Below the pieces are notes generated by a model. That model searched no databases. It was not told where the DNA came from and worked only from the letters and a program-made list of their open reading frames with translations. A DNA stretch of 64,000 nucleotides from positions 124,001-188,000 of IMG/VR virus record IMGVR_UViG_3300040801_004532, one strand, 5' to 3'. The position numbers were made by a program, and so were the translations under genes. Shown here piece by piece: positions 23,638 to 47,374 of the stretch (its first letter is position 1; every line of letters starts with the position of its first letter).

Positions 23638-23661
23638 CTATATATATAAATTAGTGATAGG
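23638..23661 (+). promoter_or_regulatory. Putative promoter motif CTATATATATWAAT
   Basis: Same motif at 29044 and 39775, each heading an intergenic gap. Confidence 0.55.
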
Positions 23662-29043: not shown

Positions 29044-29067
29044 CTATATATATTAATTTATGGAAGG
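29044..29067 (+). promoter_or_regulatory. Putative promoter motif CTATATATATWAAT
   Basis: CTATATATATTAATTTATGGAAGG. Confidence 0.5.
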
Positions 29068-31782: not shown

Positions 31783-34782
31783 ATGAAACTTTTAAATGTT
31801 GAAAGCTTTACAAGGGGGCTAACTCCCGTAACTTCCACTGAATTAAAAACCAGATCTGGAGAACCACATCCAGAAGGATTATTTAGTGAAAAGATTTTTG
31901 GTGTGGAAGGTTCGTTGGACCGAAGCAAACGATATTCTTACATCAATTTAAATTCAAAAATCGTTCATCCTGCAGCATATAAACTCTTGAAACGTATTGA
32001 CTCACGAATTGAAAAATTCCTTAACACAGAGGAAAGTTATTCAGTAGATTCGGAAGGGAAAATGATAGCAGATGATAATGGAGTATCAGGAATTTCAGAG
32101 TTTATCGAAATATTTCCCAAAATAAAATTAAGGGGCGGAACAGCGGCCAGAGATAAGATTAATAAGGTTATAACTGATAGCTACAAAACAGGAACTCTAT
32201 TCATTGATAAACTCCCTGTTGTTCCGCCAGATTTCCGTCCGATGTACACAGACGAGGGAGGTAACTTAATTGTTGATGAACTAAATACATATTATCAAAA
32301 AATAATTAGAAAGGCTGCTCAAGTTAAAAGTGTTGGATCAGGAGGAGCACTTTTTAATCTATTGAATTTTTATTTGCAAATTGCAGTAAATGAACACGAT
32401 GAATATGTAAGGACAAAAATTGCAAAAAAGTCTGGACTAATTCGTTCTAACATGTTAGGAAAACGAGTTGATTTTAGTGCCCGTGGTGTTATTACTCCCG
32501 GACCACAATTAGATGTAAATGAAATAGGCGTTCCACTAAGATCAGCTGTAACTCTTTTTCAACCTTTTCTTATTCATTATTTCTTATTCTCAAAAAAATA
32601 TCCATATAAAGATATACTTGAGGAAGAAGTTAAAAAATTTACAGACTCCGAATTATCAGTTGATACACTTAACCGAGTGATTAAATCAATAAGAGTTGGA
32701 GATAAAGTTCCAGATAGACTTGAAAATTTATTTAAGCAAGCCGCTGAAGTTGTAATGAAGGGACGAGTTGTATTAGCAAAACGAGACCCTGCTCTTCATG
32801 AGGGTTCATACAGAGCTTTTAGACCAGTATTAGTTGATGGGCATACCATTCAAATGTGTACTCTCCAGGTTGGAGGTTTCAATGCGGATTTTGATGGTGA
32901 TATGATGGCATTATATCACCCTCTAACTAAAGAATCACAACAAGAAGCCAAAGAGAGAATGATGCGTGGGGTTGGCAGCAAGAATAGTAGACATGTAACA
33001 TTTGAACTTTCAAAAGAAATGGCTGTTGGACTTTATACTATGACAAAAAATGTTAGACGAGGGTCATCTCCAATTGCAGTTAGTGAGGAGGATCTTGAAA
33101 AAGCCAATGATCCATATATTCCCGTAAAGTATAGAGGAAAAGCTACAACAATGGGGCGAGCGATTTTCAATAGTGTATTTCCAACAAACTTTAGATTTAT
33201 TGATCAATTAGTAACAAAGAAAACAGTGAATAACTTGATACCTGAAATTATTGATCAATATGGCGATGAAGTGGCTGAAAAGGTTTTTTCAAAACTAGAA
33301 AAAATTGGCTTTAAATTTGCAACCATTATTTCTCCCACATTAACACTTGATATGATTGATATGCCTGATAGTATCGAACGAATCAGAGAAAAATTAAAAA
33401 ATTCAAGCCCGGGTGAAGCTGATAAACTACTTCGGGATGGCGAAAAAATAATGATTCAACATTTAAAAGATACTGGTTTATATGATCTCATTGAGTCAGG
33501 AGCAGGAAAGGGATGGGGACAACCAAGACAGATATTAGTTTCAAAGGGTGTAATATCAGATCCAAAAGGAAATGTTCTTCCGCCAATTGAAGGATCATTT
33601 GCTGAGGGTTTGAAAACAACAGAATTTTTTAATGCTGCATCCGGTGCTAGAAAAGGTATGGCGGACCGTGCATTGAATACAGCAGACACTGGTTATTTTA
33701 CAAGACAGCTTGTTTATGTTTTATCCCCAGTTGAAGCAAGCCCAACTATAAGAGATTGTAAAACAAAAAGAACTTTAAATTTAAGATTGACAAATGATCT
33801 AATAGATCGACTATCTGGACGATATATAATCGAGAGAGGAAGAGTTGAAAAATTTTCGTCAAGATATAAGGCTGGGGATACTATTAGATTAAGAACTCCA
33901 ATATTTTGTGAAACAAAAAAGATTTGTCATACCTGTTACGGAGATCTTTTAAAGAGACATAAAAGTCCCTTTGTTGGAATCATTGCTGGAGCATCAATTG
34001 GCGAGCGTGGAACACAGTTAATCATGAGAACATTCCATACTGGTGGTGCTGCAACATTTGCTCAATATGATGTTTTACAAGATATTTTTGACAATGATCC
34101 ATTAATTGAAGTAGACTTGAAGAAATACCTTACTCAATATGAGGATAAACTTATAGCTGCAAAACCATGTAAATTAACAATTGATTTGACCAATTATGAT
34201 ATGAATAATAATATCCAAATTAAAAGAGATTTAGTTTGGGTAAATCATTTGTTATCAAGAATTGAATATGATGATACAATCTTTAACATATCATTAGATT
34301 ATCCCGTTGAATTAACAAGAACTACAATGAATCAGATTGGAAAAGAATATTTAGAGTTTACATTTGCAAAGGATGATATAATGCTTGAAATTCCATTGCA
34401 AACTACAGAAATCAAAGAGCAGGTAAATTATGTTGGCAGGTTGTTGGGAGGAAAGGTTGTTTATAAAGATCCATCCCATTTATTGACAAAGATATTAAAA
34501 ATTTATGGTGGTAAGGTTTCTGATTTGGACCTTGTACATTTTGAGGTCTTGCTTTCACAAGTTTTACGAGATAAAAGAAATGATATGTTGCCAGCTCGAT
34601 TGGGACCAACTTGGGATCCAGTAATGATGAATATTAAAAATGTAGTATTTTCTTCAGGGTTCCTTCAGGGGTTGGCATTTGAAAATGTAAATAAGGCGAT
34701 AGAGACTGGGCTCATTTCAGAAGGAGAGCTTGAACCATCTATTCTCGGAAGGGTGTTGACAGGCGAGGTTATAACAAGATAA
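31783..34782 (+). CDS. rpoC: Phage multisubunit RNA polymerase, beta'-like subunit
   Basis: GLFSEKIFG, LPVVPPDFRP, LGKRVDFSAR.VI, catalytic NADFDGD, TADTGYFTRQL, trigger loop IGERGTQLIMRTFHTGG. Confidence 0.95.
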   Translation: MKLLNVESFTRGLTPVTSTELKTRSGEPHPEGLFSEKIFGVEGSLDRSKRYSYINLNSKIVHPAAYKLLKRIDSRIEKFLNTEESYSVDSEGKMIADDNGVSGISEFIEIFPKIKLRGGTAARDKINKVITDSYKTGTLFIDKLPVVPPDFRPMYTDEGGNLIVDELNTYYQKIIRKAAQVKSVGSGGALFNLLNFYLQIAVNEHDEYVRTKIAKKSGLIRSNMLGKRVDFSARGVITPGPQLDVNEIGVPLRSAVTLFQPFLIHYFLFSKKYPYKDILEEEVKKFTDSELSVDTLNRVIKSIRVGDKVPDRLENLFKQAAEVVMKGRVVLAKRDPALHEGSYRAFRPVLVDGHTIQMCTLQVGGFNADFDGDMMALYHPLTKESQQEAKERMMRGVGSKNSRHVTFELSKEMAVGLYTMTKNVRRGSSPIAVSEEDLEKANDPYIPVKYRGKATTMGRAIFNSVFPTNFRFIDQLVTKKTVNNLIPEIIDQYGDEVAEKVFSKLEKIGFKFATIISPTLTLDMIDMPDSIERIREKLKNSSPGEADKLLRDGEKIMIQHLKDTGLYDLIESGAGKGWGQPRQILVSKGVISDPKGNVLPPIEGSFAEGLKTTEFFNAASGARKGMADRALNTADTGYFTRQLVYVLSPVEASPTIRDCKTKRTLNLRLTNDLIDRLSGRYIIERGRVEKFSSRYKAGDTIRLRTPIFCETKKICHTCYGDLLKRHKSPFVGIIAGASIGERGTQLIMRTFHTGGAATFAQYDVLQDIFDNDPLIEVDLKKYLTQYEDKLIAAKPCKLTIDLTNYDMNNNIQIKRDLVWVNHLLSRIEYDDTIFNISLDYPVELTRTTMNQIGKEYLEFTFAKDDIMLEIPLQTTEIKEQVNYVGRLLGGKVVYKDPSHLLTKILKIYGGKVSDLDLVHFEVLLSQVLRDKRNDMLPARLGPTWDPVMMNIKNVVFSSGFLQGLAFENVNKAIETGLISEGELEPSILGRVLTGEVITR

Positions 34783-34794
34783 CGGAGAATTTGA

Positions 34795-37700
34795 ATGATC
34801 AAATATGACTCATTAATTCAGTACACAAGAGTTGTAGATTCATTAAGGTTTCCTCTAGATCGAGACAAGCCATTTTTAATGGTCTATTTCTCTGAAAACT
34901 CCTTGTTTGCAAAAGATTATCCAAAGCTTAATTTGAGGAGAGTTGATTTTCGGCATGTGATTGTTCCGTTTACAAGATTGCCTGTCACAAGGTTGACTCC
35001 AGAAGTACGCGCAGCTTATAAAGAGTACAACCTTCGTCCATATAGTATGCAAATGAAATTCCCCAGTGATAAAAATCTTATCTTTGATACTACATTTTAT
35101 ACCAACACAGTTGATAAAACATATAAACCAAATACATACAGACAAAGAGCTGGATTCTTAATTCAAAATATTCTTAGTAAATCTTTTCAATCATTTCCTG
35201 ATAATTATAGAAAGATTCTTGCATATGCGGTCGATAAAAACGAGCCTCTCAATACATTTGTAAATAGAAAAATTTTCCCGATTTTAAGACAACTACGTTC
35301 AAAAGAAATTTATTTTGATGATCTTCTTTTGATTGTCATTGGTGATACAGATGCCAGATATAGACTTTTGGTAAAAGATCAAGATTATAAATTTCAACGC
35401 GTGGTTCAGTATGTAAAAACAATAAAGGCTGATGATACAGAAGAAGAAAAAGAACAGGAAGTTATCAATGCAACAATGAAGATAATGAAGCATGTAGGGT
35501 CCGATGTTGCTAAACCAGATACTGTTAAATATGCTGTTAAGGATTATCTTGACAAGAATCCAAGTATGGTTGATAAAATTGCTAATGGTGAATTAAGTAG
35601 CGAAGAGATGGAAAAGCTTACTGCTGCATCAATATTTTTTAGAACAAGTGGGGATTTAAGCAAAGCCAATCGGTTGGCAAAAGCGATACCAGCAGGAAAG
35701 GCAAAGACAGCCGTTCAGAGAATTAGCAGACAATATGAAGATGACCTTCTTAAGAAACAACCATCAGAGAATTTAAGCGACTATATTTATAATCAAACTG
35801 AACCTTTGGCAGAAATGGTTGATAAAAAAACACCTGAGCATATCTTTGATAAACGGAGAATCGACTTTGAAACAAATTTGAAAAAAGATATGTCTAATGC
35901 ATTTAAGGTTCTTGAGAATAGGGATATCCCGTTATCATTTCAGTCAATATCAATTAAACCAAAACCTCAAAAGGCCGGGGAGCTTTCAAAGTCTGATGAA
36001 GCCTTAGTTGAAATCAAACTAAAAGATAAGAGCGGTAGGGTTCACGACGTTCAACTTTCAATCCCTAGAATTGATCCGAATACAGGAACATTCAGGGTTA
36101 ATGGTAAACGAAAATGTATGATCAATCAAATTGTCCTGAATCCAATTAGTTTTCCCAAGGCATATGACTCAAAATTTGAAAGTTCGTATTCAAGTTTTCA
36201 TATTTATAGCAAACGAACCAAAAAATTAAAATACCTTGAAGTGTATATGGGTTCATTTAGGATGCCTCTTATGATCCTACTTTGCTACGCATTTGGTTTT
36301 CAGGAAATCTTGCAGCAATATGGAATAAAAGCACAAATAGTAAAAGAAAAGCCAAATAAAGATAAATATTTTTCAGAAGTTCCTAGTTCATATCTACTTT
36401 TTGAAAATGTTGATACAGAATTAAAAGAAGAATTAGTATCTTCATTTATCCATGCAAAGATTAATCAATATGAAATTGATAAGGAATTTTTATCTAAAAA
36501 ATATTTTAATGATTTGATTATGAAGATGACTGGACGTGTTGATGCTACATACCTAATTTCAAATAACATTGAAAATATAGTTGATCCAATAGTAAGGCAG
36601 GTCTTGATAAACCAACAATTACCATTTGAGTTACCACACATCATTCAATATATGTCAGAAAAGGTTGTAGCTGGTTTTGTTCAAGATAGAAACGATCTGA
36701 CAAATCAACGAATACGAAATTCGGAACTTCTTGTTCATTTGGCTCAAAAGCAATTATTAACAGCATATACTGAATACAGGCAACAATATTTAGCAGGAAA
36801 CAAAGATGCAACATTAAATGTTCCAGAGGGAAAAGTTTTAAGACAATTCGTTGGTCTGGAAATTGTACAAGATATGGAGTATGCGAATCCTGCTGAGGAG
36901 ATGGCTGCTATTACAAAAACGTCTCCGGTAGGTAAAACTGTTGGAGGTATTCCCGATAAACAAGCTGTCCAGTTAGATGCAAGAAATGTTCATACAACAT
37001 ATTTCGGAAATATTGATCCGCTTGATACAGCAGAAGGACCAAACATTGGTATTACCCAACAATTAACTGTTGATGCATATGTCACATCGGCTCGTGGATT
37101 GTTTGGAAGAAAGGCAATGTTGGATTCTGAATCCTCGGGGATTCTTTCAACATCTTCAGCTCTTGTCCCATTTATTGAAAACAATGAAGGTGCAAGAATT
37201 ATCATGTCTTGTAACCAGGTTAAACAGATGTTGCCTTTAAAAAACCCAGAGCCACCAATAGTCCAAACAGGTTATGAGTCATTATTAACAAATGTTCTAT
37301 CTGACAGCTTTGTTAAAAAATCACCATGTAAAGGAAAAATTGATAAAATAACTAATGATTATATTGACATAATTTGTACTGGCAATAAGAAACAGAGAAT
37401 AGATATTTCGCCTGTTCAATTGAAGTCTGGTAGCGGTAAAAACACCTTAAGTACATTCAAACCAATTGTTTCAAAGAATCAGTCTGTTAAAGAAAAGCAG
37501 ATTATTGCTGAGGGGAGTTGTATCTCTGGCGGAACAATTTCAATGGGTAGAAATTTGGCTTGTGCATATATGCCATACAAAGGATATAACTTTGAGGATG
37601 GTTTAGTAATAAATGAAAAATTGGTTAGCCAAAATAAACTAACATCGCTTCATGGTATTGATGTTGAGGCAACAGTCGAAAAAAATGATCGAGTAATTAG

Positions 37701-38880
37701 TATTGTTGAGCTGGGAAAACACACAGAAAAGGGCGACCCACTTTTTAGAAAATTTCCTGGTGATATTGATGAACTATTGGGTTATGACCAAGAAGAGGAT
37801 GAAAGTGTTGATACATATGATGGTCAAATTATTATCAAAAGTCCAGGTGGTCGTGTAGTTGATATTGATGTTTTCTCTAATCTTCCGCCTGATCATTTTC
37901 CAGCATTAAAACCTTTGATTGAAAGAACCAATAAAAAATTCAAAAAGCCAGCAAAAGATAAATTTACAGATAGGGGTATATCAATCAAAGGTATAAAAAT
38001 AGTTTTTAAAGTAGAACAAGAATTGCCAATTGGAATTGGAGATAAACTGTGTAATAGATTTGGTAATAAGGGAATAATTTCTTTAATTGAAAAAGATGAA
38101 TTAATGCCAAGAACTCCTTGGGGTGAAAGGCTTGATATTATTCTTAATCCCCTTGGGGTAATAAGCAGAATGAATATGGGCCAAATTTATGAGTTGTATT
38201 GTGGGTTGATTTCAAGATATGTTGCCAATCAAATTAAACGAGGAGCAAACAAATCTGAAGTAATCTCAATGTTTAGCGCAGTTGTAAAGGGGCTTGACAC
38301 CTCTCCAAATAATAAATTCAGTACAAAATTTTTAGCGAATTTGAAAAAATTAAGTACAGCTCAATATAATAAAATGATTGATCAAATTAAAAATGCAGGA
38401 TATATTCCAATTATTGTACCTCCATTTAAGGCGCCTTCTCACAAACAAATATTGCCCTTACTGAAAAAATTTAATCTGAAAACTGGATATAATTTATCAT
38501 TGCCTGAGTTTAATACAAAAACAAAAAACTCTGTTCCGTTTGGTTATTTGTATATTGCAAAGTTGGAGCATATTGGTAAGGATAAATTACACTCAAGATC
38601 AACCGGACCAACTGTTGGGAAGATATTACAACCAACCGGAGGGAAAAGAAGGGAGGGCGGACAAAGAATGGGAGAAGGTGATACATGGTCATTAGCATCA
38701 TATAATTGTCCACATTTATTATCAGAATTCTTTGGGCCACTATCAGATGACGTGGTAACAAAAAATGAAATCCTTACTGATATAATTCAAACTGGTGAAG
38801 CTGATTTTAGAGCTACAAAATCATCACCAACCAAAGATTTACTAAACGCATATTTCACATCGTTGATGTTGGGGGGATAA
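34795..38880 (+). CDS. rpoB: Phage multisubunit RNA polymerase, beta-like subunit with N-terminal extension
   Basis: GTFRVNG, TAEGPNIG, GYNFEDG, GDKLCNRFGNKG, LNPLGVISRMN, KLEH, GGQRMGEGD. Confidence 0.95.
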   Translation: MIKYDSLIQYTRVVDSLRFPLDRDKPFLMVYFSENSLFAKDYPKLNLRRVDFRHVIVPFTRLPVTRLTPEVRAAYKEYNLRPYSMQMKFPSDKNLIFDTTFYTNTVDKTYKPNTYRQRAGFLIQNILSKSFQSFPDNYRKILAYAVDKNEPLNTFVNRKIFPILRQLRSKEIYFDDLLLIVIGDTDARYRLLVKDQDYKFQRVVQYVKTIKADDTEEEKEQEVINATMKIMKHVGSDVAKPDTVKYAVKDYLDKNPSMVDKIANGELSSEEMEKLTAASIFFRTSGDLSKANRLAKAIPAGKAKTAVQRISRQYEDDLLKKQPSENLSDYIYNQTEPLAEMVDKKTPEHIFDKRRIDFETNLKKDMSNAFKVLENRDIPLSFQSISIKPKPQKAGELSKSDEALVEIKLKDKSGRVHDVQLSIPRIDPNTGTFRVNGKRKCMINQIVLNPISFPKAYDSKFESSYSSFHIYSKRTKKLKYLEVYMGSFRMPLMILLCYAFGFQEILQQYGIKAQIVKEKPNKDKYFSEVPSSYLLFENVDTELKEELVSSFIHAKINQYEIDKEFLSKKYFNDLIMKMTGRVDATYLISNNIENIVDPIVRQVLINQQLPFELPHIIQYMSEKVVAGFVQDRNDLTNQRIRNSELLVHLAQKQLLTAYTEYRQQYLAGNKDATLNVPEGKVLRQFVGLEIVQDMEYANPAEEMAAITKTSPVGKTVGGIPDKQAVQLDARNVHTTYFGNIDPLDTAEGPNIGITQQLTVDAYVTSARGLFGRKAMLDSESSGILSTSSALVPFIENNEGARIIMSCNQVKQMLPLKNPEPPIVQTGYESLLTNVLSDSFVKKSPCKGKIDKITNDYIDIICTGNKKQRIDISPVQLKSGSGKNTLSTFKPIVSKNQSVKEKQIIAEGSCISGGTISMGRNLACAYMPYKGYNFEDGLVINEKLVSQNKLTSLHGIDVEATVEKNDRVISIVELGKHTEKGDPLFRKFPGDIDELLGYDQEEDESVDTYDGQIIIKSPGGRVVDIDVFSNLPPDHFPALKPLIERTNKKFKKPAKDKFTDRGISIKGIKIVFKVEQELPIGIGDKLCNRFGNKGIISLIEKDELMPRTPWGERLDIILNPLGVISRMNMGQIYELYCGLISRYVANQIKRGANKSEVISMFSAVVKGLDTSPNNKFSTKFLANLKKLSTAQYNKMIDQIKNAGYIPIIVPPFKAPSHKQILPLLKKFNLKTGYNLSLPEFNTKTKNSVPFGYLYIAKLEHIGKDKLHSRSTGPTVGKILQPTGGKRREGGQRMGEGDTWSLASYNCPHLLSEFFGPLSDDVVTKNEILTDIIQTGEADFRATKSSPTKDLLNAYFTSLMLGG

Positions 38881-39504: not shown

Positions 39505-39753
39505 ATGTCAGAGATTACAGTAAAGGTTGGAAATGTTAGTTTAACCGCATCGAACAATGACTTGGTTTCTGTTGACGAAACACCAGATGGAGTTTCGTTT
39601 AGTTTTAAAGGTGGCCTTCAACTGCTCTTTACCGACCCATACATGCCATCTTCAGCAAAACAAATTATCAAAAATACTGCAGATAACATGAGCGGAAAAT
39701 TGGTTTTTGAATTAGACAATGCAAAACGTCCTGCCAGAGTTGAAGCAGTTTAA
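39505..39753 (+). CDS. Hypothetical protein
   Basis: 82-aa ORF with RBS GAGGG. Confidence 0.5.
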   Translation: MSEITVKVGNVSLTASNNDLVSVDETPDGVSFSFKGGLQLLFTDPYMPSSAKQIIKNTADNMSGKLVFELDNAKRPARVEAV

Positions 39754-39774
39754 ATTTCATTTAATCAAATACAT

Positions 39775-39800
39775 CTATATATATAAATAACTGAGATAGG
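39775..39800 (+). promoter_or_regulatory. Putative promoter of the RNA array / vWA operon
   Basis: CTATATATATAAATAACTGAGATAGG, near-identical to 23638-23661. Confidence 0.55.
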
Positions 39801-39812
39801 TGATTTATAACT

Positions 39813-39899
39813 AAAAAATTGGAAGACTTGTTTGTAGATTCAGGAATGCCACCGTTGAGGTAACCAACTCCAACTACAACAACCAGCTTCCAATTTTTT
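39813..39899 (+). ncRNA. Y-RNA-like array unit 1 (single-hairpin cargo)
   Basis: 13-bp stem AAAAAATTGGAAG/CTTCCAATTTTTT; GAAGACT; inner TTGTAG/CTACAA; TTCAG. Confidence 0.7.
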
Positions 39900-39908
39900 C
39901 ACTTTTTT

Positions 39909-40015
39909 AATCAGAAGACTTTGTGTAATTTCAGAGGTGATTGGTTCACCATTGCTCTACAAAAGCGACGCACCCGTTCGACTCGGGATAATAATTACAC
40001 GTTTTACTTCTGATT
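39909..40015 (+). ncRNA. Y-RNA-like array unit 2 (tRNA-like D, anticodon and T arms, no acceptor stem)
   Basis: AATCAGAAG/CTTCTGATT; GTGTAATT/AATTACAC; cargo GGTG-ATTGGTT-CACC, TTGCT-CTACAAA-AGCGA, CCCG-TTCGACT-CGGG. Confidence 0.75.
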
Positions 40016-40023
40016 TTAATTTT

Positions 40024-40115
40024 ATTCTAGAAGACTATTTGTAGTTTCAGAAGATACTTGAACGTATCACGCACTTGTAAATGCGCAAACCTACTACATT
40101 CAATTCTTCTAGAAT
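40024..40115 (+). ncRNA. Y-RNA-like array unit 3 (two-hairpin cargo)
   Basis: ATTCTAGAAG/CTTCTAGAAT; TGTAGT/ACTACA; cargo GATAC-TTGAAC-GTATC and CGCA-CTTGTAAA-TGCG. Confidence 0.7.
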
Positions 40116-40123
40116 CCTTTTCA

Positions 40124-40258
40124 AACCTGAAAGACTGTTGGTGGTTCCAGACAAAGAAGCTCGATTGGTTGAGCATTTGCTTAATGTGCAAACGGTTGTG
40201 GGTTCAAGTCCCATCATTGTCACCAAAAGGTGTAAACCACTGTCCTAACTTTCAGGTT
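40124..40258 (+). ncRNA. Y-RNA-like array unit 4 (encloses a full tRNA-like cloverleaf)
   Basis: AACCTGAAAG/CTTTCAGGTT; GGTGGTT/AACCACT; TCCAG. Confidence 0.75.
40150..40225 (+). tRNA. Degenerate tRNA / tRNA mimic, anticodon AAT (nominal Ile), encoded CCA
   Basis: GACAAAG AA GCTC-GATTGGTT-GAGC A TTTGC-TTAATGT-GCAAA CGGTT GTGGG-TTCAAGT-CCCAT CATTGTC ACCA; 76 nt; lacks U8, A14, A21 and has one acceptor mismatch. Confidence 0.6.
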
Positions 40259-40265
40259 CCATTTT

Positions 40266-40334
40266 GATTGATGGGCTGAGTGTGATTTTAGTGATCTTTC
40301 GGGGAGGGCTTGATCACATTCAGACCCATTAGTC
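40266..40334 (+). ncRNA. Long imperfect hairpin between the array and the vWA gene
   Basis: GATTGATGGG/CCCATTAGTC plus CTGAGTGTGAT/ATCACATTCAG with G-U pairs. Confidence 0.5.
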
Positions 40335-40439
40335 ATAACACAAACCTTTTAGCGAAAGAGGGTTCATTTGCAACATTCTAATTTCTAAAAAAATTGGATA
40401 TAAGAGTTTTACGTCGAAATTACGAAAGGAGGAAGGCGA

Positions 40440-41957
40440 ATGACGAGACAGCAGTTATCTATTGATTCTGGGATACTTCAGTTTGCGCCAAAAGGGGCGT
40501 TCTATGAAGAAACTGATGAACAATTCCAACAGGTTTCAAGGATGTGGAATGAGCTATTCAATTATGACAGAACCCTTTTTTGTTTAATCACTCTTCTTGG
40601 AGGGACAGGATTTTCAAAGGGGGTAATGAGCCACATTCTATTGTCAAATCCCCAAAGCTCCACAGGAAGAGAACTTATCCCAGAAGGTCTTTCGGTTGAT
40701 TATGAAACCGAGGTAATTCTATACAATCTATCAAAGGAGAAAACCCCAAGAGCATTAAAAAATCTTTTGATGTTGACCGGCCGTGAAGGTCAAACAAAAG
40801 TAAATAATGCAAGAACAAGGAAACTAATCCTTGAATATATCTTTAATCGAGGTCATGATTCCCTCGACAATTTGGCTGTAAATTATAAAGGAAAATTAAA
40901 AACTCTTGTTCGTCATGCCCTTGGAAGACAAGATCTGGCAAAGATTCTAATGGGCGACGACCAACTTTTTCAAAAGTGGATTGGTCGTTATCATAAAAAT
41001 GCACTTCCGGTTGTTTTATACCTTTTCGATAGACCAATACCAAACGATCAAGTGTTTGCATATTATAAGAAAGTTGAACAGGTGTTAAAGCTAAAGGAAG
41101 CAGCACAAAGACGTGACGTTGAAGCGTTTCGACATTTCATGGATGGGCTTCCGAGACTAACAGTTCTCGGATATCGAAATACATATAAGGTTCCAATCGA
41201 AAAAAGTGAAATTTTTGAAAAAACCCAAATGTCAAATCGTCAAGCCATTCAGATGGAAGCAGCGGCGAAACGATCTGGCACAAAGGTCAAGGTAAACTAT
41301 AAAAACCAAGACGTTTATGATTTATGGAAAGCATTGTATTTTAAGCTACAGCAAAGCGACGATGAAAATTTGGATAAGATTGTTGAGGCAATCGGAGAGA
41401 AGGATGGAAATAAACTTGACATCGGCGAAGTGAGTGTTGTATTTGATGTGTCAAGATCCATGGTTGGTAGCGACCAACGACCCCTTCATCCATTCCTTAC
41501 AGGGTTATCCATATTGTCTGTGCTGGATAATATCCAAAATGTTTTCTATGTTGGCGGAACATCAATTCCAACAAAAATCAATGACAAAGAAATGTACTTT
41601 GTTTTTCCATCAAACGAAACAGCATTGTGGAAGGGACTGGTAGATGCTGTAGCGTCTGGGTCAAAGAAAATTATTGTCATTTCAGATGCTTATGAAAATT
41701 CTCCAAAGGGTATGTTTCAACATGTATATAACCATTTCAAAGACAAGGAGAACATAGAGATTATTCATATTAACCCAGTATTCTCGGCTGATTCACAACA
41801 AGGGTCTGCTAGAAAATTAGCAGATGATATTGAGCCGCTTCCTGTCTCAAGTTATAAATTTCTCGAGACAGAAATTATTTTTAAAAGAATGTTGGAAAAT
41901 AAGGATCTCGTGAAAAACTTACTCGTTGGGAAATACAGAAAACTGATAGGAGGTTAA
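40440..41957 (+). CDS. Helical domain + C-terminal vWA protein; putative divergent Ro60/TROVE-like RNA-binding protein
   Basis: MIDAS VFDVSRSM, ETAL, ISDAYEN in the last ~180 aa; basic helical N-terminal ~320 aa; Ro60-like size; strong RBS. Confidence 0.55.
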   Translation: MTRQQLSIDSGILQFAPKGAFYEETDEQFQQVSRMWNELFNYDRTLFCLITLLGGTGFSKGVMSHILLSNPQSSTGRELIPEGLSVDYETEVILYNLSKEKTPRALKNLLMLTGREGQTKVNNARTRKLILEYIFNRGHDSLDNLAVNYKGKLKTLVRHALGRQDLAKILMGDDQLFQKWIGRYHKNALPVVLYLFDRPIPNDQVFAYYKKVEQVLKLKEAAQRRDVEAFRHFMDGLPRLTVLGYRNTYKVPIEKSEIFEKTQMSNRQAIQMEAAAKRSGTKVKVNYKNQDVYDLWKALYFKLQQSDDENLDKIVEAIGEKDGNKLDIGEVSVVFDVSRSMVGSDQRPLHPFLTGLSILSVLDNIQNVFYVGGTSIPTKINDKEMYFVFPSNETALWKGLVDAVASGSKKIIVISDAYENSPKGMFQHVYNHFKDKENIEIIHINPVFSADSQQGSARKLADDIEPLPVSSYKFLETEIIFKRMLENKDLVKNLLVGKYRKLIGG

Positions 41958-41961
41958 TTAT

Positions 41962-42930
41962 ATGGCAAATATCTTTGAAACCCTAAAAATCAAAGGAGTT
42001 GGAATCGGTTCTATTCAGAGCGTTGATGAAATGACAGTCATCCCTTTGATTGGTGAAGACCGTGGGGATGTTGCCAGTCCGTCCAGTTTAAAATTTCAAA
42101 GAACCACAAGTTATGGTTCAATGCAGTTTAAAAATGAAGACAGTCGCCCAGCTATTGTGCCATCCAATTTCATGATACGAGGTCGGGGAGCACAAGATCA
42201 TGCAATGGCCTCATCTGGAGTTCTGAAATCAAGGGAAGTGAAAACATTTGAAACTGCTTGTTGTATTGAAGAAACACAGGGCGGCTTCCTAACTCATGAA
42301 GGAAATGAAGAAGATATTCTACCTATAGAACTACGTCGAAATCTCTTGGATGCAAACAAGAGACGAGACAGAAACTATGGAAAATTGTGGAGCAATATTA
42401 AAGATTGGCTCAATGGGCTTACCCTACAAAGAAAAAGTCATGGCGCCCATTTAAGAAATTTCTATGATGATCATAACGTAAGAACAGCACTTGAAGCATT
42501 TGCTGCTGAGTTTGAACCGGTTGATGGTCAAATCGGGGCAATCATTATGTTTTCTGGGATCCCTGTCGGCATTGAGATTATGCCAACAGCAGATCATTGG
42601 AACTCATATTGGCAGCAGCTTCTGCGAGGGTGTTATGGTTCAGAACTTCTAAGGATGAAGATGTTGGGCAAAGTTTCACAGTCAACTCTAATTTTGCCTG
42701 ATATTCCAGATGATGCAAATCCTATGGAAGTCAAAAATATTTTAGAAACATTTATGAACCACATTCAACAGGAAGTTCTGCCTGTAATTCAGAACATTAA
42801 TATCACATCCAACACAAGAGTATCATCAGATGGATCACTTAGAACTCAGTTAGTTAGAACTGATGGCGGGGGTGGAGGAGATGTTATTATTCAAGAATCA
42901 ACCCCAATTTATGTCTCAATTATTTTATAG
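41962..42930 (+). CDS. ARPP-like (DUF6569-related) protein
   Basis: MTVIPLIG, F.NE....IVP, G.QDH, ACCIEE.QG, GQIGAII...GIE pattern recalled from ARPP families. Confidence 0.45.
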   Translation: MANIFETLKIKGVGIGSIQSVDEMTVIPLIGEDRGDVASPSSLKFQRTTSYGSMQFKNEDSRPAIVPSNFMIRGRGAQDHAMASSGVLKSREVKTFETACCIEETQGGFLTHEGNEEDILPIELRRNLLDANKRRDRNYGKLWSNIKDWLNGLTLQRKSHGAHLRNFYDDHNVRTALEAFAAEFEPVDGQIGAIIMFSGIPVGIEIMPTADHWNSYWQQLLRGCYGSELLRMKMLGKVSQSTLILPDIPDDANPMEVKNILETFMNHIQQEVLPVIQNINITSNTRVSSDGSLRTQLVRTDGGGGGDVIIQESTPIYVSIIL

Positions 42931-44851: not shown

Positions 44852-46108
44852 ATGACCGACGACACAGCCAAAGAAGAATTTAAATACCATGAACGATTGA
44901 ACATCCCCGTCCTTACAATCGAAAAGATCAAACAGCTTTTGAAGAATGATATTGCTGACACGCTACATGCGTGGAAGGAAGGGAGAAAAGTAGACAAACA
45001 ATGTTACAGGATCATTGGCCCTGCTGGTGTCGGCAAGACACAAATTTGTGGTCAAATCGCTGCTGAATTGACAAATGAACTATTCGGGGAGTGGAACAAG
45101 GCACGACCCACTCCAGAACATAAACTATTTGATATGATTATGGTCAAAGCTCCTGTTCTATCAAGGGATGACTTTATCATTCCGTTTCCGGTAACAGATG
45201 GCAAGGACTTTTCATTCAGAATGCTATATTCTGACTTTGTTCCGAAAGAGGTTGGATCATTTGGAATATTTGTCATTGATGAAGTATCAAGAGGTGATCA
45301 TCAACTCCAGCAGCTTCTATGGCAGGTCCAAAATGAGTACGCCGTCCACAATCTGCAATTCCCAGAAGGATGGTTTGTGATCTCAGTAGACAACCCTGAT
45401 GACTCAGAGTACTCCATGGATACGCTTGAAGATGCTGCTGGTTTACGAAGGCAATTGCATCTATACGTTGAGGTAAGTCCTATCGACTTCCTCAACTATG
45501 CAATTGCAAATGATTTTCACCCTCTTGTCATTGAGTGGATTCAGATGCGTCCGGAATATCTATACGATTTCAACGCTCAAAAGGTCGGGTCGGTTTATGC
45601 AAACCCAGCCAGCTATGAGAAGCTTTCGGATCATTTGTGGAAAATGCAAATGAGACGAGGAAGCTTGGATTATGATGAAATCGAAAACAAAGCATCTGGG
45701 CTTCTCAATACCAATATGTCCCAACTCTTTGTCTCGTTTGCAAGAGACAAGAAAGACATCAATCCAAAAGATGTATTCTATGAATTTGATAAGGTTGAAA
45801 AACAAATCAAGGCTCTATTAAAAGAAAACAATATGTCCAAATTGGGCGAGCTTATGATCGGGTTCTGTACGTTTATGACAACATCAATGCCCGAGTATGA
45901 CGATAGAAAGTTAGAAAACGTCTATAAGTTCCTATTGATGATGCCCATTGATACAGCGGCTCTTTTTATCTCACAAATTGATGGCTTTGACCGGTCATCA
46001 AAAGCATTTAAATACATGACTCAAATCCATCTCACTCTTCTGAAAAAGCATCCACAATACAAGAAAGAGTTCTATGATCCAATCGTAAGAGCTGGCGATG
46101 GACGATAG
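44852..46108 (+). CDS. MoxR-like AAA+ ATPase
   Basis: GPAGVGKT, FVIDEVSR, VDNP, LRRQ. Confidence 0.8.
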   Translation: MTDDTAKEEFKYHERLNIPVLTIEKIKQLLKNDIADTLHAWKEGRKVDKQCYRIIGPAGVGKTQICGQIAAELTNELFGEWNKARPTPEHKLFDMIMVKAPVLSRDDFIIPFPVTDGKDFSFRMLYSDFVPKEVGSFGIFVIDEVSRGDHQLQQLLWQVQNEYAVHNLQFPEGWFVISVDNPDDSEYSMDTLEDAAGLRRQLHLYVEVSPIDFLNYAIANDFHPLVIEWIQMRPEYLYDFNAQKVGSVYANPASYEKLSDHLWKMQMRRGSLDYDEIENKASGLLNTNMSQLFVSFARDKKDINPKDVFYEFDKVEKQIKALLKENNMSKLGELMIGFCTFMTTSMPEYDDRKLENVYKFLLMMPIDTAALFISQIDGFDRSSKAFKYMTQIHLTLLKKHPQYKKEFYDPIVRAGDGR

Positions 46109-46117
46109 GGGGAAAAC

Positions 46118-47374
46118 ATGCAACCCTCAAGTTCAGTTACAAGTGAACGAATAAAGGTTCTGATTGCCAAATTCGTCCTAAAATACAATTATTGGGGGTA
46201 TCTATTTTCTCGAGTCAGGAGACAGGCGGATCCAAACATGCCATCAATTATGGGCATTGCACCTGAACCTGACGGATCAATTTGTTTATATTATAACCCC
46301 CCATTGATTGATAATACAGACGATGAAAACATCACCAAGGTGATTGAGCATGAAGGACTGCATCTATTAAATAAGCATGTTCCAAGGCTTATTAGAATTC
46401 TTGCAAATGATCCTGATCCATTAAGAAGGGAATCTAAAGCAGAAATATGGAATATTGCAGCTGATTGCTGTGTAAACACACAAGGGAAACTAGGTGAAAG
46501 TCTTACCATTAATGGCAAACCCTGGCCCATGTGTCTCCCCGCAAGATATAAAATGCCTGAGGGACAAATAACCGAGTTTTATTATAACTGGTTGCTTGAA
46601 AATGCAAAAAGCCAACCTATGCCAATGATCGGGGACCATGGAAAATGGACCAAAAATCTAAAGGGAGTTGCTGATCTTAGTGCTCTCAGTAGAAAAGTAG
46701 ATCAACATATAAGATCAATAATCAAAGAATCAGCAAAGACCTTCAACAAGGATCGTGGAAGGTTGCCGTCACATATTGCTGATCTTATTCAGGGAGCTCT
46801 AGCTCCACCAAAAGCACCATACTATCAAATCATTAGAAAATTAATCAAGGGGTCAAGATTAACAAAATTCAAAAGATCCCCAACCAAAATAAATAGAAAA
46901 CGAACTTATACATTTCATTTGGCGTCAATGCCAGATCTCCCTCAAATTTCGCCCTTTCCTGGAAAGAGTCGAGATTTTACATTTGATATTGTCGTTATGA
47001 TTGATACATCAGGAAGTATGTCAAACGATGATATAAAAGAGGGATTGAGTGGTATTAAAAATATCGTTGAAAATGATAGACATTGTCATACCACAGTCCT
47101 GGAAGTTGATGCTGGCGTTGAAAAAGAATATGAATGTAAAAAAATAAGGGATATTCAATTTAATGTAAAGGGACGAGGCGGAACAACACTAACCCCTGGT
47201 TTAGAAAGAGCCAGAGAACTTGGTTGTGATGTTTGTCTTGCATTTACGGATGGGTATACCGAAAATATCAATGCCTTAAGCAGAAAAAGGCTACCTAAGA
47301 AACTTATTTGGGTTATAACCAAAGGTGGGTCGCCTAATCAGATTAATAAAACAGGATTTGTGGTGAAAATATGA
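46118..47374 (+). CDS. DUF2201-type metallopeptidase + vWA protein (AAA partner)
   Basis: HEGLH (HExxH), WNIAADCCVN, IDTSGSMS, GRGGT, FTDG. Confidence 0.8.
   Translation: MQPSSSVTSERIKVLIAKFVLKYNYWGYLFSRVRRQADPNMPSIMGIAPEPDGSICLYYNPPLIDNTDDENITKVIEHEGLHLLNKHVPRLIRILANDPDPLRRESKAEIWNIAADCCVNTQGKLGESLTINGKPWPMCLPARYKMPEGQITEFYYNWLLENAKSQPMPMIGDHGKWTKNLKGVADLSALSRKVDQHIRSIIKESAKTFNKDRGRLPSHIADLIQGALAPPKAPYYQIIRKLIKGSRLTKFKRSPTKINRKRTYTFHLASMPDLPQISPFPGKSRDFTFDIVVMIDTSGSMSNDDIKEGLSGIKNIVENDRHCHTTVLEVDAGVEKEYECKKIRDIQFNVKGRGGTTLTPGLERARELGCDVCLAFTDGYTENINALSRKRLPKKLIWVITKGGSPNQINKTGFVVKI

What the first reader, a model, noticed from the sequence alone, without database searches (positions are those of the whole stretch)
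39775..42930. Array of four tRNA-mimic RNA cassettes coupled to a Ro60/TROVE-like vWA protein and an ARPP-like protein
Seen: four back-to-back units (39813-39899, 39909-40015, 40024-40115, 40124-40258) share one architecture: a perfect 9-13 bp outer stem ending in AAG/CTT, an internal loop starting ACT, a 6-8 bp inner stem containing GTRR, an unpaired TYCAG, then a variable cargo. The stem sequences differ between units but pairing is kept (covariation), so selection is on RNA structure. Cargoes are tRNA-derived. A promoter-like motif precedes the array, and a 505-aa helical+vWA gene and a 322-aa ARPP-like gene follow. Established: bacterial Ro60 (Rsr; TROVE+vWA) binds Y RNAs by a bulged terminal stem, and YrlA Y RNAs carry a tRNA-like module made of D, T and acceptor elements without an anticodon arm. 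Inference: this is a different, modular phage RNP system in which a constant handle loads onto the vWA protein and displays exchangeable tRNA-like decoys that keep anticodon loops, possibly to titrate or mislead host anticodon nucleases or other tRNA-targeting defences. I do not recognise this handle motif from described Y RNAs.
Basis: partly seen in the sequence, partly recalled or inferred. Interest (0 to 1): 0.95.

Follow-up and report, generated by a model that had tools for sequence, protein, structure and literature searches.

The report
Phage Ro-like protein with tRNA-carrying RNAs
A giant phage carries a row of five small structured RNAs that share one conserved stem "handle" and display tRNAs or tRNA-like pieces, always next to a distant look-alike of the RNA-binding Ro60 protein and a putative enzyme; the trio recurs in many huge phages and seems undescribed.

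Summary
The four units sit at the stated coordinates, and a fifth, degenerate one lies at 40265-40335. All share an outer stem, an invariant G|ACU, an inner stem, UCAG and a variable apical cargo. In 287 distinct units from about 70 related loci, 13 of 14 handle pairs covary and G·U outnumbers A·C 159 to 12. Covariance-model hits lie only on the coding strand, directly upstream of homologues of the 505-aa gene.

That protein has no sequence-level TROVE signal. A confident AlphaFold model (pLDDT 92.5) matches only Ro60 structures over its full length (TM 0.42-0.52), and its MIDAS motif is intact. The array, Ro-like gene and ARPP gene persist in phage lineages where all other neighbours differ.

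Cargoes are full tRNAs (unit 4), acceptor-less three-arm tRNA mimics (unit 2), or short hairpins (about half). Anticodon loops keep U33 and R37, but the triplet drifts at about the neutral rate and includes UUA.

Best reading: a divergent Ro60/Y-RNA-type particle that displays tRNA bodies. The decoy function is untested. No Rfam, Pfam or literature match was found: a new variant of a known kind.

The parts
39754..39794 (+). Conserved AT-rich box (TCATTT ... CTATATATATAAAT ... CTGA) between the stop codon of the upstream 82-aa ORF and unit 1. It is a candidate promoter of the array for an unknown polymerase or sigma factor.
   Evidence: The same box precedes the first unit in nearly all lineage-0 loci. 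The 14-mer occurs three times in the window against 0.25 expected. There is no sigma-70 consensus match.
39813..39899 (+). Unit 1: 13-bp outer stem, G|ACUU, inner stem, UUCAG, and a roughly 30-nt cargo with one small hairpin.
   Evidence: covariance-model hit at 39820-39892, 37.6 bits.
39909..40015 (+). Unit 2: handle plus an acceptor-less three-arm tRNA mimic (D arm, anticodon arm with loop CUACAAA, T arm with loop UUCGACU).
   Evidence: covariance-model hit at 39912-40012, 54.7 bits.
40024..40115 (+). Unit 3: handle plus a two-hairpin cargo. The second hairpin has an anticodon-loop-like CUUGUAAA loop.
   Evidence: covariance-model hit at 40028-40111, 50.6 bits.
40124..40258 (+). Unit 4: handle enclosing a complete tRNA (40150-40225, anticodon AAU, encoded CCA). 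The tRNA's first base is the G of the UCCAG motif.
   Evidence: ARAGORN; Rfam tRNA 53.2 bits; covariance-model hit at 40128-40254, 21.1 bits, E 0.04.
40265..40335 (+).
   Evidence: Covariance-model hit at 40269-40331, 14.3 bits, E about 1. It aligns with the terminal units of relatives. The last unit is of the short class in 51 of 60 loci.
40440..41957 (+). 505-aa Ro60-like protein: an N-terminal alpha-helical repeat domain and a C-terminal vWA domain with a DxSxS MIDAS motif.
   Evidence: AlphaFold2 model with pLDDT 92.5 and pTM 0.90. The top Foldseek PDB hits are all Ro60, full length, TM 0.42-0.52. D336, S338 and S340 are conserved. No Pfam, PHROG or PDB-sequence hit.
41962..42930 (+). 322-aa ARPP-1 family protein, a putative enzyme.
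   Evidence: Pfam PF20208, E 2.5e-25. Q19, Q78, H80, C101, E185, W217, R222 and Y225 are invariant in 123 homologues, and Q106 and R125 nearly so (122 and 121 of 123). It lies immediately downstream of the Ro-like gene in 75 of 80 distant loci.

Best explanation
This is a three-part module of huge phages. It consists of an array of small non-coding RNAs (five here, three to eight elsewhere), a highly diverged Ro60-like ring-plus-vWA protein, and an ARPP-family putative enzyme.

Each RNA closes its 5' and 3' ends into a two-tier stem, P1 then an internal loop then P2. The loop and the base of P2 carry near-invariant nucleotides: G|ACU, UGU/ACA and UCAG. On top of the stem sits a variable module: a whole tRNA, a tRNA body without an acceptor stem, or a small hairpin.

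By analogy with Ro60 and Y RNAs, I infer that the constant stem is the docking site for the Ro-like protein. I also infer that the apical tRNA-shaped module is what the particle presents to a tRNA-binding partner, such as a host tRNA-processing, tRNA-modifying or tRNA-cleaving enzyme, with ARPP as the catalytic partner.

What is shown: the RNA structure, its strand, its strict linkage to the two genes, the Ro60-like fold, and the unconstrained anticodon. What is inferred: protein-RNA binding, the discrete RNA species, and the biological role (management or protection of the tRNA pool during infection).
For: - Structure. 94% of cells are paired and 13 of 14 pairs covary. Across 287 units there are 3629 Watson-Crick, 159 G·U and only 12 A·C cells, so selection acts on the + strand RNA.
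- Specificity. In the window, hits occur only in the array. In 58 homologous loci all 281 hits are on the + strand and upstream of the gene.
- Deep linkage. In 80 loci with Ro-like proteins about 25% identical, ARPP follows in 75 and no other neighbour is shared. A variant handle (RAACU ... UUCAG) gives 137 hits, all on the + strand and upstream, in 35 of 35 group-2 loci.
- Protein fold. Ro60 structures are the only full-length matches. BFVD matches include a 'Ro-like RNA binding protein' of a Gordonia phage.
- Parallels with known Ro systems. Y RNAs are 80-130 nt, have a terminal stem with an internal loop, and are encoded next to Ro60. YrlA carries a tRNA-like domain (PMC4201824). Thermus phage phiLo has two Y-like RNAs upstream of its Ro60 gene (PMC12135203).
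- The cargoes are not ordinary decoders. Of 89 anticodon loops, 85 have U33 and 88 have R37, yet they carry 26 different anticodons, including UUA eight times and A34 23 times. The triplet diverges about as fast as 4-fold degenerate sites while the scaffold changes about ten times more slowly.
Against: - There is no sequence-level homology to TROVE, and TM scores are only about 0.5.
- The handle lacks the known Ro-binding motifs and matches no Rfam Y RNA model.
- No expression or binding data exist.
- Full tRNAs with encoded CCA, sitting inside phage tRNA islands, could simply be tRNA genes.
- One covariance-model-confirmed orphan handle lies in a contig with no Ro-like gene within 8 kb.
- Group-1 loci give few model hits.
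Confidence: 0.6

Rival explanations
1. These are ordinary phage tRNA genes and their decayed copies. The handle is a precursor-processing stem, for example for RNase III, RNase E or a phage nuclease, that releases each cargo from a polycistronic transcript. The Ro-like and ARPP proteins act in tRNA maturation or quality control rather than forming a stable particle with the handle.
For: - 34 units hold complete tRNAs, many with encoded CCA, and the tRNA 5' end abuts the UCAG motif.
- The module sits in tRNA islands in distant phages.
- Stacked P1 and P2 make an interrupted helix of about 17-20 bp.
- Spacers are short and U-rich.
Against: - About half of the units carry only a short hairpin, and 63 carry tRNA bodies with no acceptor stem, so there is nothing useful to release.
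- Anticodons drift neutrally and are often UUA.
- Ordinary tRNAs in the same islands, and the adjacent tRNA-Met, have no handle.
- The loop nucleotides are sequence-invariant, which suggests specific recognition.
Confidence: 0.2
2. The handle is a new self-cleaving ribozyme or other autonomous processing motif that flanks tRNA-like cargo, comparable in role to the ribozymes found beside phage tRNAs. Its linkage to the two genes is secondary.
For: Unpaired nucleotides are invariant (GACU in 286 of 287 units; UCAG dominant) at helix junctions.
Against: - No ribozyme family matches even at E<=10.
- The two-helix, internal-loop architecture matches no known small ribozyme core that I could recognise (my own knowledge).
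- The strict linkage to the protein pair across deep divergence argues for protein dependence.
Confidence: 0.07
3. The units are DNA-level cassettes, either hairpin recombination sites or miniature mobile elements that shuttle tRNA genes. The inverted repeats act in DNA, not in RNA.
For: Cassette number and content vary between related phages at one fixed site.
Against: - G·U pairs outnumber A·C 159 to 12, which is strand-specific and expected for RNA.
- All units have one orientation.
- No recombinase was found among the genes examined around the module.
- An unbiased pattern scan of viral contigs found almost no copies outside this locus type.
Confidence: 0.03

Closest known systems
Bacterial Ro60 (Rsr) with Y RNAs, especially YrlA (Chen et al. 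2014, PMC4201824)
   Same: - A ring-plus-vWA protein is encoded next to one or several small RNAs.
- The 5' and 3' ends of each RNA form a stem with an internal loop.
- A tRNA-like module sits at the apex.
- The RNAs are of similar size (about 60-135 nt).
   Different: - The protein has no detectable TROVE sequence signal.
- The handle has G|ACU ... UCAG instead of GNCGAAN0-1G.
- Cargoes keep the anticodon arm, where YrlA lacks it, or are whole tRNAs.
- Arrays hold three to eight units.
- The partner gene is ARPP rather than RtcB/RtcA.
- There is no Rfam match.
Thermus phage phiLo Ro60 with Yrl1 and Yrl2 (PMC12135203; PDB 9KOP, 9L5Y)
   Same: A phage-encoded Ro60 has Y-like RNAs just upstream of its gene. 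It is among the structural matches.
   Different: phiLo Ro60 is a recognisable Ro60, and its RNAs carry the CGAA motif and no tRNA. TM to the present model is only about 0.32-0.36.
tRNA gene arrays of jumbo phages
   Same: Unit 4 and 34 other units contain complete tRNAs, and distant versions of the module sit inside tRNA islands.
   Different: Ordinary array tRNAs have no handle and keep their anticodons. Here the anticodon drifts and many units have no acceptor stem.
ARPP proteins of ARG-centred ADP-ribose conflict systems (Iyer et al. 2022, PMC9503650)
   Same: It belongs to the same Pfam family (ARPP-1) with invariant Cys and Gln residues, predicted to act on ribose-containing substrates.
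   Different: That paper lists ARPP with ARG, HIRAN, WYL or deacetylase partners. Pairing with a Ro-like protein and an RNA array is not among them.

Membership tests
Ro60 / TROVE-vWA protein family | TROVE domain detectable by sequence profile (Pfam PF05731) | tested here: not met
   No Pfam hit for the window protein or for 10 distant relatives. Profiles A1 and A8 searched against PDB sequences find no Ro60.
Ro60 / TROVE-vWA protein family | Overall fold: helical-repeat ring followed by a vWA domain | tested here: met
   The model has pLDDT 92.5. Eleven Ro60 chains lead the Foldseek PDB list over 533-572 columns, with E 5e-6 to 1e-4 and TM 0.32-0.52. Ring closure was not inspected directly.
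Ro60 / TROVE-vWA protein family | MIDAS motif (DxSxS) in the vWA domain | tested here: met
   D336 and S340 are invariant and S338 is at least 90% conserved across 65 diverse homologues.
Ro60 / TROVE-vWA protein family | Binds Y RNA on the outer surface and single-stranded ends in the central hole | not testable with these tools
   Needs RNA immunoprecipitation, EMSA or a solved structure.
Y RNA / YrlA | Match to curated covariance models (Rfam) | tested here: not met
   Only tRNA reaches threshold, and no Y RNA family is listed at E<=10 over 39700-40450.
Y RNA / YrlA | Conserved Ro-binding sequence in the 5' strand (GGUCCGA in animals, GNCGAAN0-1G in bacteria) | tested here: not met
   0 of 287 units for either motif.
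Y RNA / YrlA | 5' and 3' ends pair into a long stem with an internal loop; encoded next to the Ro gene | tested here: met
   P1, internal loop and P2 with covariation. All units lie directly upstream of the gene.
Y RNA / YrlA | tRNA-like domain made of D and T arms without an anticodon arm (YrlA) | tested here: not met
   The tRNA-like cargoes keep a canonical anticodon arm. About half of the units have no tRNA-like domain at all.
tRNA (unit 4) | Cloverleaf scoring above the Rfam and ARAGORN thresholds | tested here: met
   53.2 bits against a gathering score of 29; ARAGORN tRNA-Ile (AAU).
tRNA (unit 4) | Anticodon conserved among orthologues, as expected of a decoder | tested here: not met
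   Orthologous scaffolds at least 95% identical differ in anticodon in 4 of 7 pairs. One example is UUA against UAU at 4-fold-site divergence 0.14.
ARPP-1 (Pfam PF20208) | Profile match above the curated cut-off, with conserved Cys and Gln | tested here: met
   89.8 bits against a cut-off of 27. C101, Q19 and Q78 are invariant and Q106 is in 122 of 123 homologues.

The most novel reading that the evidence does not exclude
Huge phages carry a previously unrecognised ribonucleoprotein system. A Ro-like ring docks on a constant RNA handle and displays whole tRNAs and tRNA bodies whose anticodon triplet is free to drift. An ARPP enzyme is the catalytic partner. The particle would act as a generic tRNA-shaped bait or adaptor that captures, blocks or redirects host enzymes acting on tRNA, such as anticodon nucleases or modification and repair enzymes. 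That would be a new counter-defence or tRNA-pool control strategy, and a new branch of the Ro/Y RNA world.
Probability: 0.3. Interest if true: 0.9.

Novelty: new variant of a known kind. Interest (0 to 1): 0.8.

Why it matters
Ro60 and Y RNAs are conserved from bacteria to humans, yet their mechanism is understood in only a few cases, and the purpose of tRNA mimicry by bacterial Y RNAs is an open question. This finding offers a large natural data set on that question:
- The protein family has at least 456 clusters at 50% identity.
- Hundreds of RNA units are available.
- The putative protein-binding handle and the displayed module are cleanly separable.
- The displayed module ranges from a hairpin to a whole tRNA.

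That makes the question of what the tRNA-like part of a Y RNA is for directly testable by swapping cargoes. The finding also gives ARPP, an enzyme family of unknown activity, an RNA context. And it flags tRNAs in huge-phage genomes that are probably not decoders, which matters for annotating phage tRNA sets and for inferring recoding from suppressor-like tRNAs.

Tried and rejected
- Rfam at gathering and at E<=10 gave nothing but tRNA.
- Pfam, PHROGs and phmmer or hmmsearch against PDB sequences gave nothing for the 505-aa protein, even with a 65-sequence profile.
- Ten distant family members scanned with Pfam showed no TROVE.
- blastn of the region against GenBank phages found no match. tblastn found only one uncultured 462-kb phage.
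- The sigma-70 promoter scan found none.
- My own regex-and-stem unit finders were either too insensitive or too noisy, so I dropped them in favour of the covariance models.
- I considered the archaeal bulge-helix-bulge motif, the kink-turn, and hammerhead or hairpin ribozyme cores by eye. The loop geometry and sequences do not fit. This rests on my own knowledge and was not formally tested.
- Gene neighbours in two distant loci include no RNA-repair genes: DnaB-like helicase, DUF932 and a sigma factor.
- The MoxR and metallopeptidase-vWA pair downstream in the window is not conserved with the module, so I excluded it.
- Literature searches found no description of this handle or of a Ro-like/ARPP pairing.
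Full report
**Context.** The window comes from a 248-kb viral contig, IMGVR_UViG_3300040801_004532. It is a jumbo phage with its own multisubunit RNA polymerase (31783-38880), a T4-like topoisomerase II, UvsX, ribonucleotide reductase and SbcC. All genes around the finding are on the + strand.

**Observation.**
- Placement: the four units are exactly as described. Their outer stems are 13, 9, 10 and 10 bp. Each closes with G-C and is followed by ACU, then an inner stem, U(U/C)CAG and a cargo.
- Unit 4: it encloses a real tRNA at 40150-40225, with anticodon AAU and an encoded CCA.
- Unit 5: a degenerate fifth unit lies at 40265-40335. It scores only 14.3 bits, but it aligns with the terminal short unit of related phages.
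- Rfam: there is no other match, even at E<=10.

**Related loci.**
- Homologues: the 505-aa protein has hundreds of metagenomic homologues, all without Pfam domains.
- Loci collected: I took 12 viral loci, 80 metagenome loci and 2 genome loci.
- Model R1: a covariance model built from eight short units found 59 hits in the window and 11 viral loci. Fifty-eight are on the + strand just upstream of the homologous gene. The one minus-strand hit mirrors a + hit.
- Model R2: a rebuilt model finds only the five array units in the whole window. In 58 further homologous loci it finds 281 units, every one on the + strand and upstream of the gene.
- Array size: arrays hold three to eight units, most often five, with spacers mostly 10-29 nt long and U-rich flanks.

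**Structure.**
- Covariation: on 56 units, 94.1% of cells pair against 75% in shuffles and 35-51% when partners are slid. Thirteen of 14 pairs show compensatory change.
- Strand: over 287 distinct units there are 3629 Watson-Crick, 159 G·U and 12 A·C cells. The structure is therefore selected in RNA of the + strand. One caveat is that these alignments were fitted by the model.
- Invariant bases: the closing G-C and ACU are present in 286 of 287 units.
- Ro-binding motifs: the known motifs are absent.
- Third helix: in many units a third helix starts at or near the G of UCAG; in the full tRNAs this motif abuts or overlaps the tRNA 5' end.

**Cargo.**
- Classes: the 287 units divide into 142 with a short hairpin, 34 with complete tRNAs by ARAGORN (most ending in CCA), 63 with three-arm tRNA bodies lacking an acceptor stem, and 48 other.
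- Anticodon loops: 89 cargoes have both a T arm and an anticodon arm. U33 is kept in 85, a purine at position 37 in 88, and A38 in 74. Yet they carry 26 different anticodons, including UUA eight times and A at position 34 in 23.
- Orthologous tRNAs: clearly orthologous tRNAs differ only in the triplet, for example UCC, UUA, AUC and ACG on one scaffold.
- Divergence rates: scaffold pairs at least 95% identical differ in anticodon in 4 of 7 cases. Per-site divergence is 0.38 in the triplet against 0.025 in the scaffold.
- Neutral yardstick: the same locus pairs differ by 0.12-0.69 at 4-fold sites of the neighbouring gene. The triplet therefore evolves at about the neutral rate while the body is strongly conserved.
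- Reading: these are not fixed decoders. They are tRNA-shaped modules.

**Proteins.**
- Sequence searches: the 505-aa protein gives nothing in sequence searches.
- First model: it had pLDDT 78 and already matched only Ro60 over its full length.
- Family size: a profile search of 1.84 billion representatives found 456 clusters (one search shows no TROVE in ten of them; the search itself is).
- Second model: a 65-sequence alignment raised the model to pLDDT 92.5 and pTM 0.90.
- PDB matches: Foldseek again lists 11 Ro60 chains first, with TM up to 0.52, followed by isolated vWA domains.
- BFVD matches: these include a Gordonia phage 'Ro-like RNA binding protein'.
- MIDAS motif: the residues are conserved.
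- ARPP: the 322-aa protein is ARPP-1, with invariant Cys, Gln and His residues.

**Linkage beyond synteny.**
- Lineage 0: the loci closest to the window share the whole neighbourhood: RNA polymerase beta, two small ORFs, the array, the Ro-like gene, ARPP and further genes. Adjacency there could be inherited.
- Distant subfamilies: I therefore fetched 80 loci of distant subfamilies. ARPP lies directly downstream in 75 of them, and none of the other neighbours is kept (Pfam confirmation).
- Variant handle: these loci sit in tRNA islands and carry RAACU ... UUCAG. A model of this variant gives 137 hits, all on the + strand and upstream. They occur in 35 of 35 group-2 loci but in only 4 of 26 group-1 loci.
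- Handled and unhandled tRNAs: handled tRNAs with varied anticodons sit beside unhandled ordinary tRNAs, and in group 2 beside a tRNA-Met.
- Protein-independent scan: a pattern scan of viral contigs recovered eight contigs already known to carry the gene, one orphan unit and about 20 chance matches.

**Interpretation.** The best-supported reading is a divergent Ro60/Y-RNA-type particle. The constant handle would dock on the Ro-like protein and the apical tRNA-shaped module would be displayed, with ARPP as the enzymatic partner. This follows the logic established for Rsr and YrlA (PMC4201824) and for phage phiLo (PMC12135203), but binding, expression and function are all inferred. The main rival is that the handle is a processing stem for tRNA genes. 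That rival is weakened by the hairpin-only and acceptor-less units, the drifting anticodons and the unhandled neighbouring tRNAs.

**Novelty.** I found no prior description. The published ARPP contexts do not include a Ro-like partner. Only one uncultured phage in GenBank has a homologue.

Noticed in passing
window 23638-23651, 29044-29057, 39775-39788: The 14-mer CTATATATAT[A/T]AAT occurs three times on the + strand against 0.25 expected. The third copy precedes the RNA array and is conserved in related phages. It may be a promoter consensus of this phage lineage, which encodes its own RNA polymerase.
   Followed up: partly
window 31783-38880: There are two large, unsplit genes for RNA polymerase beta-prime-like (999 aa) and beta-like (1361 aa) subunits. 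Across the lineage they lie directly upstream of the two small ORFs and the array.
   Followed up: partly
L184 8288-8350 (minus strand): An orphan handle unit (45 bits) sits in an unrelated 28-kb viral contig. There is no Ro-like or ARPP gene within the 8 kb downstream and no tRNA in that locus. It is the only such exception seen.
   Followed up: partly
L126-L175 (for example L143 1961-2169, L165 1771-1973): In the distant group-2 phages, a handle-embedded tRNA of variable anticodon is regularly followed by an unhandled tRNA-Met (CAU).
   Followed up: partly
window 44852-47374: A MoxR-like AAA ATPase and a metallopeptidase-vWA (DUF2201) pair lie downstream. They are conserved within the close lineage but not with the Ro-like/ARPP module in distant phages.
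   Followed up: partly
proteins P0113 and P0115: Two close homologues of the Ro-like protein are labelled in NCBI as belonging to Thermoplasmata and Heimdallarchaeaceae genome bins. These are probably viral contigs binned with archaeal genomes, but the host of this phage lineage remains unknown.
   Followed up: no
window 40027-40267: Four short ORFs (54-69 aa, on both strands) overlap the RNA array. They are most likely spurious.
   Followed up: no
window 40345-40368: A small hairpin (AACCUUUU ... AAAGAGGGUU) followed by U-rich sequence lies between unit 5 and the ribosome-binding site of the Ro-like gene. It could be a terminator or an attenuator.
   Followed up: no
L015 4001-4219: A Clostridia genome bin has a 29%-identical match to residues 51-128 only. 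It has no handle units, and its relationship to the family is unclear.
   Followed up: no
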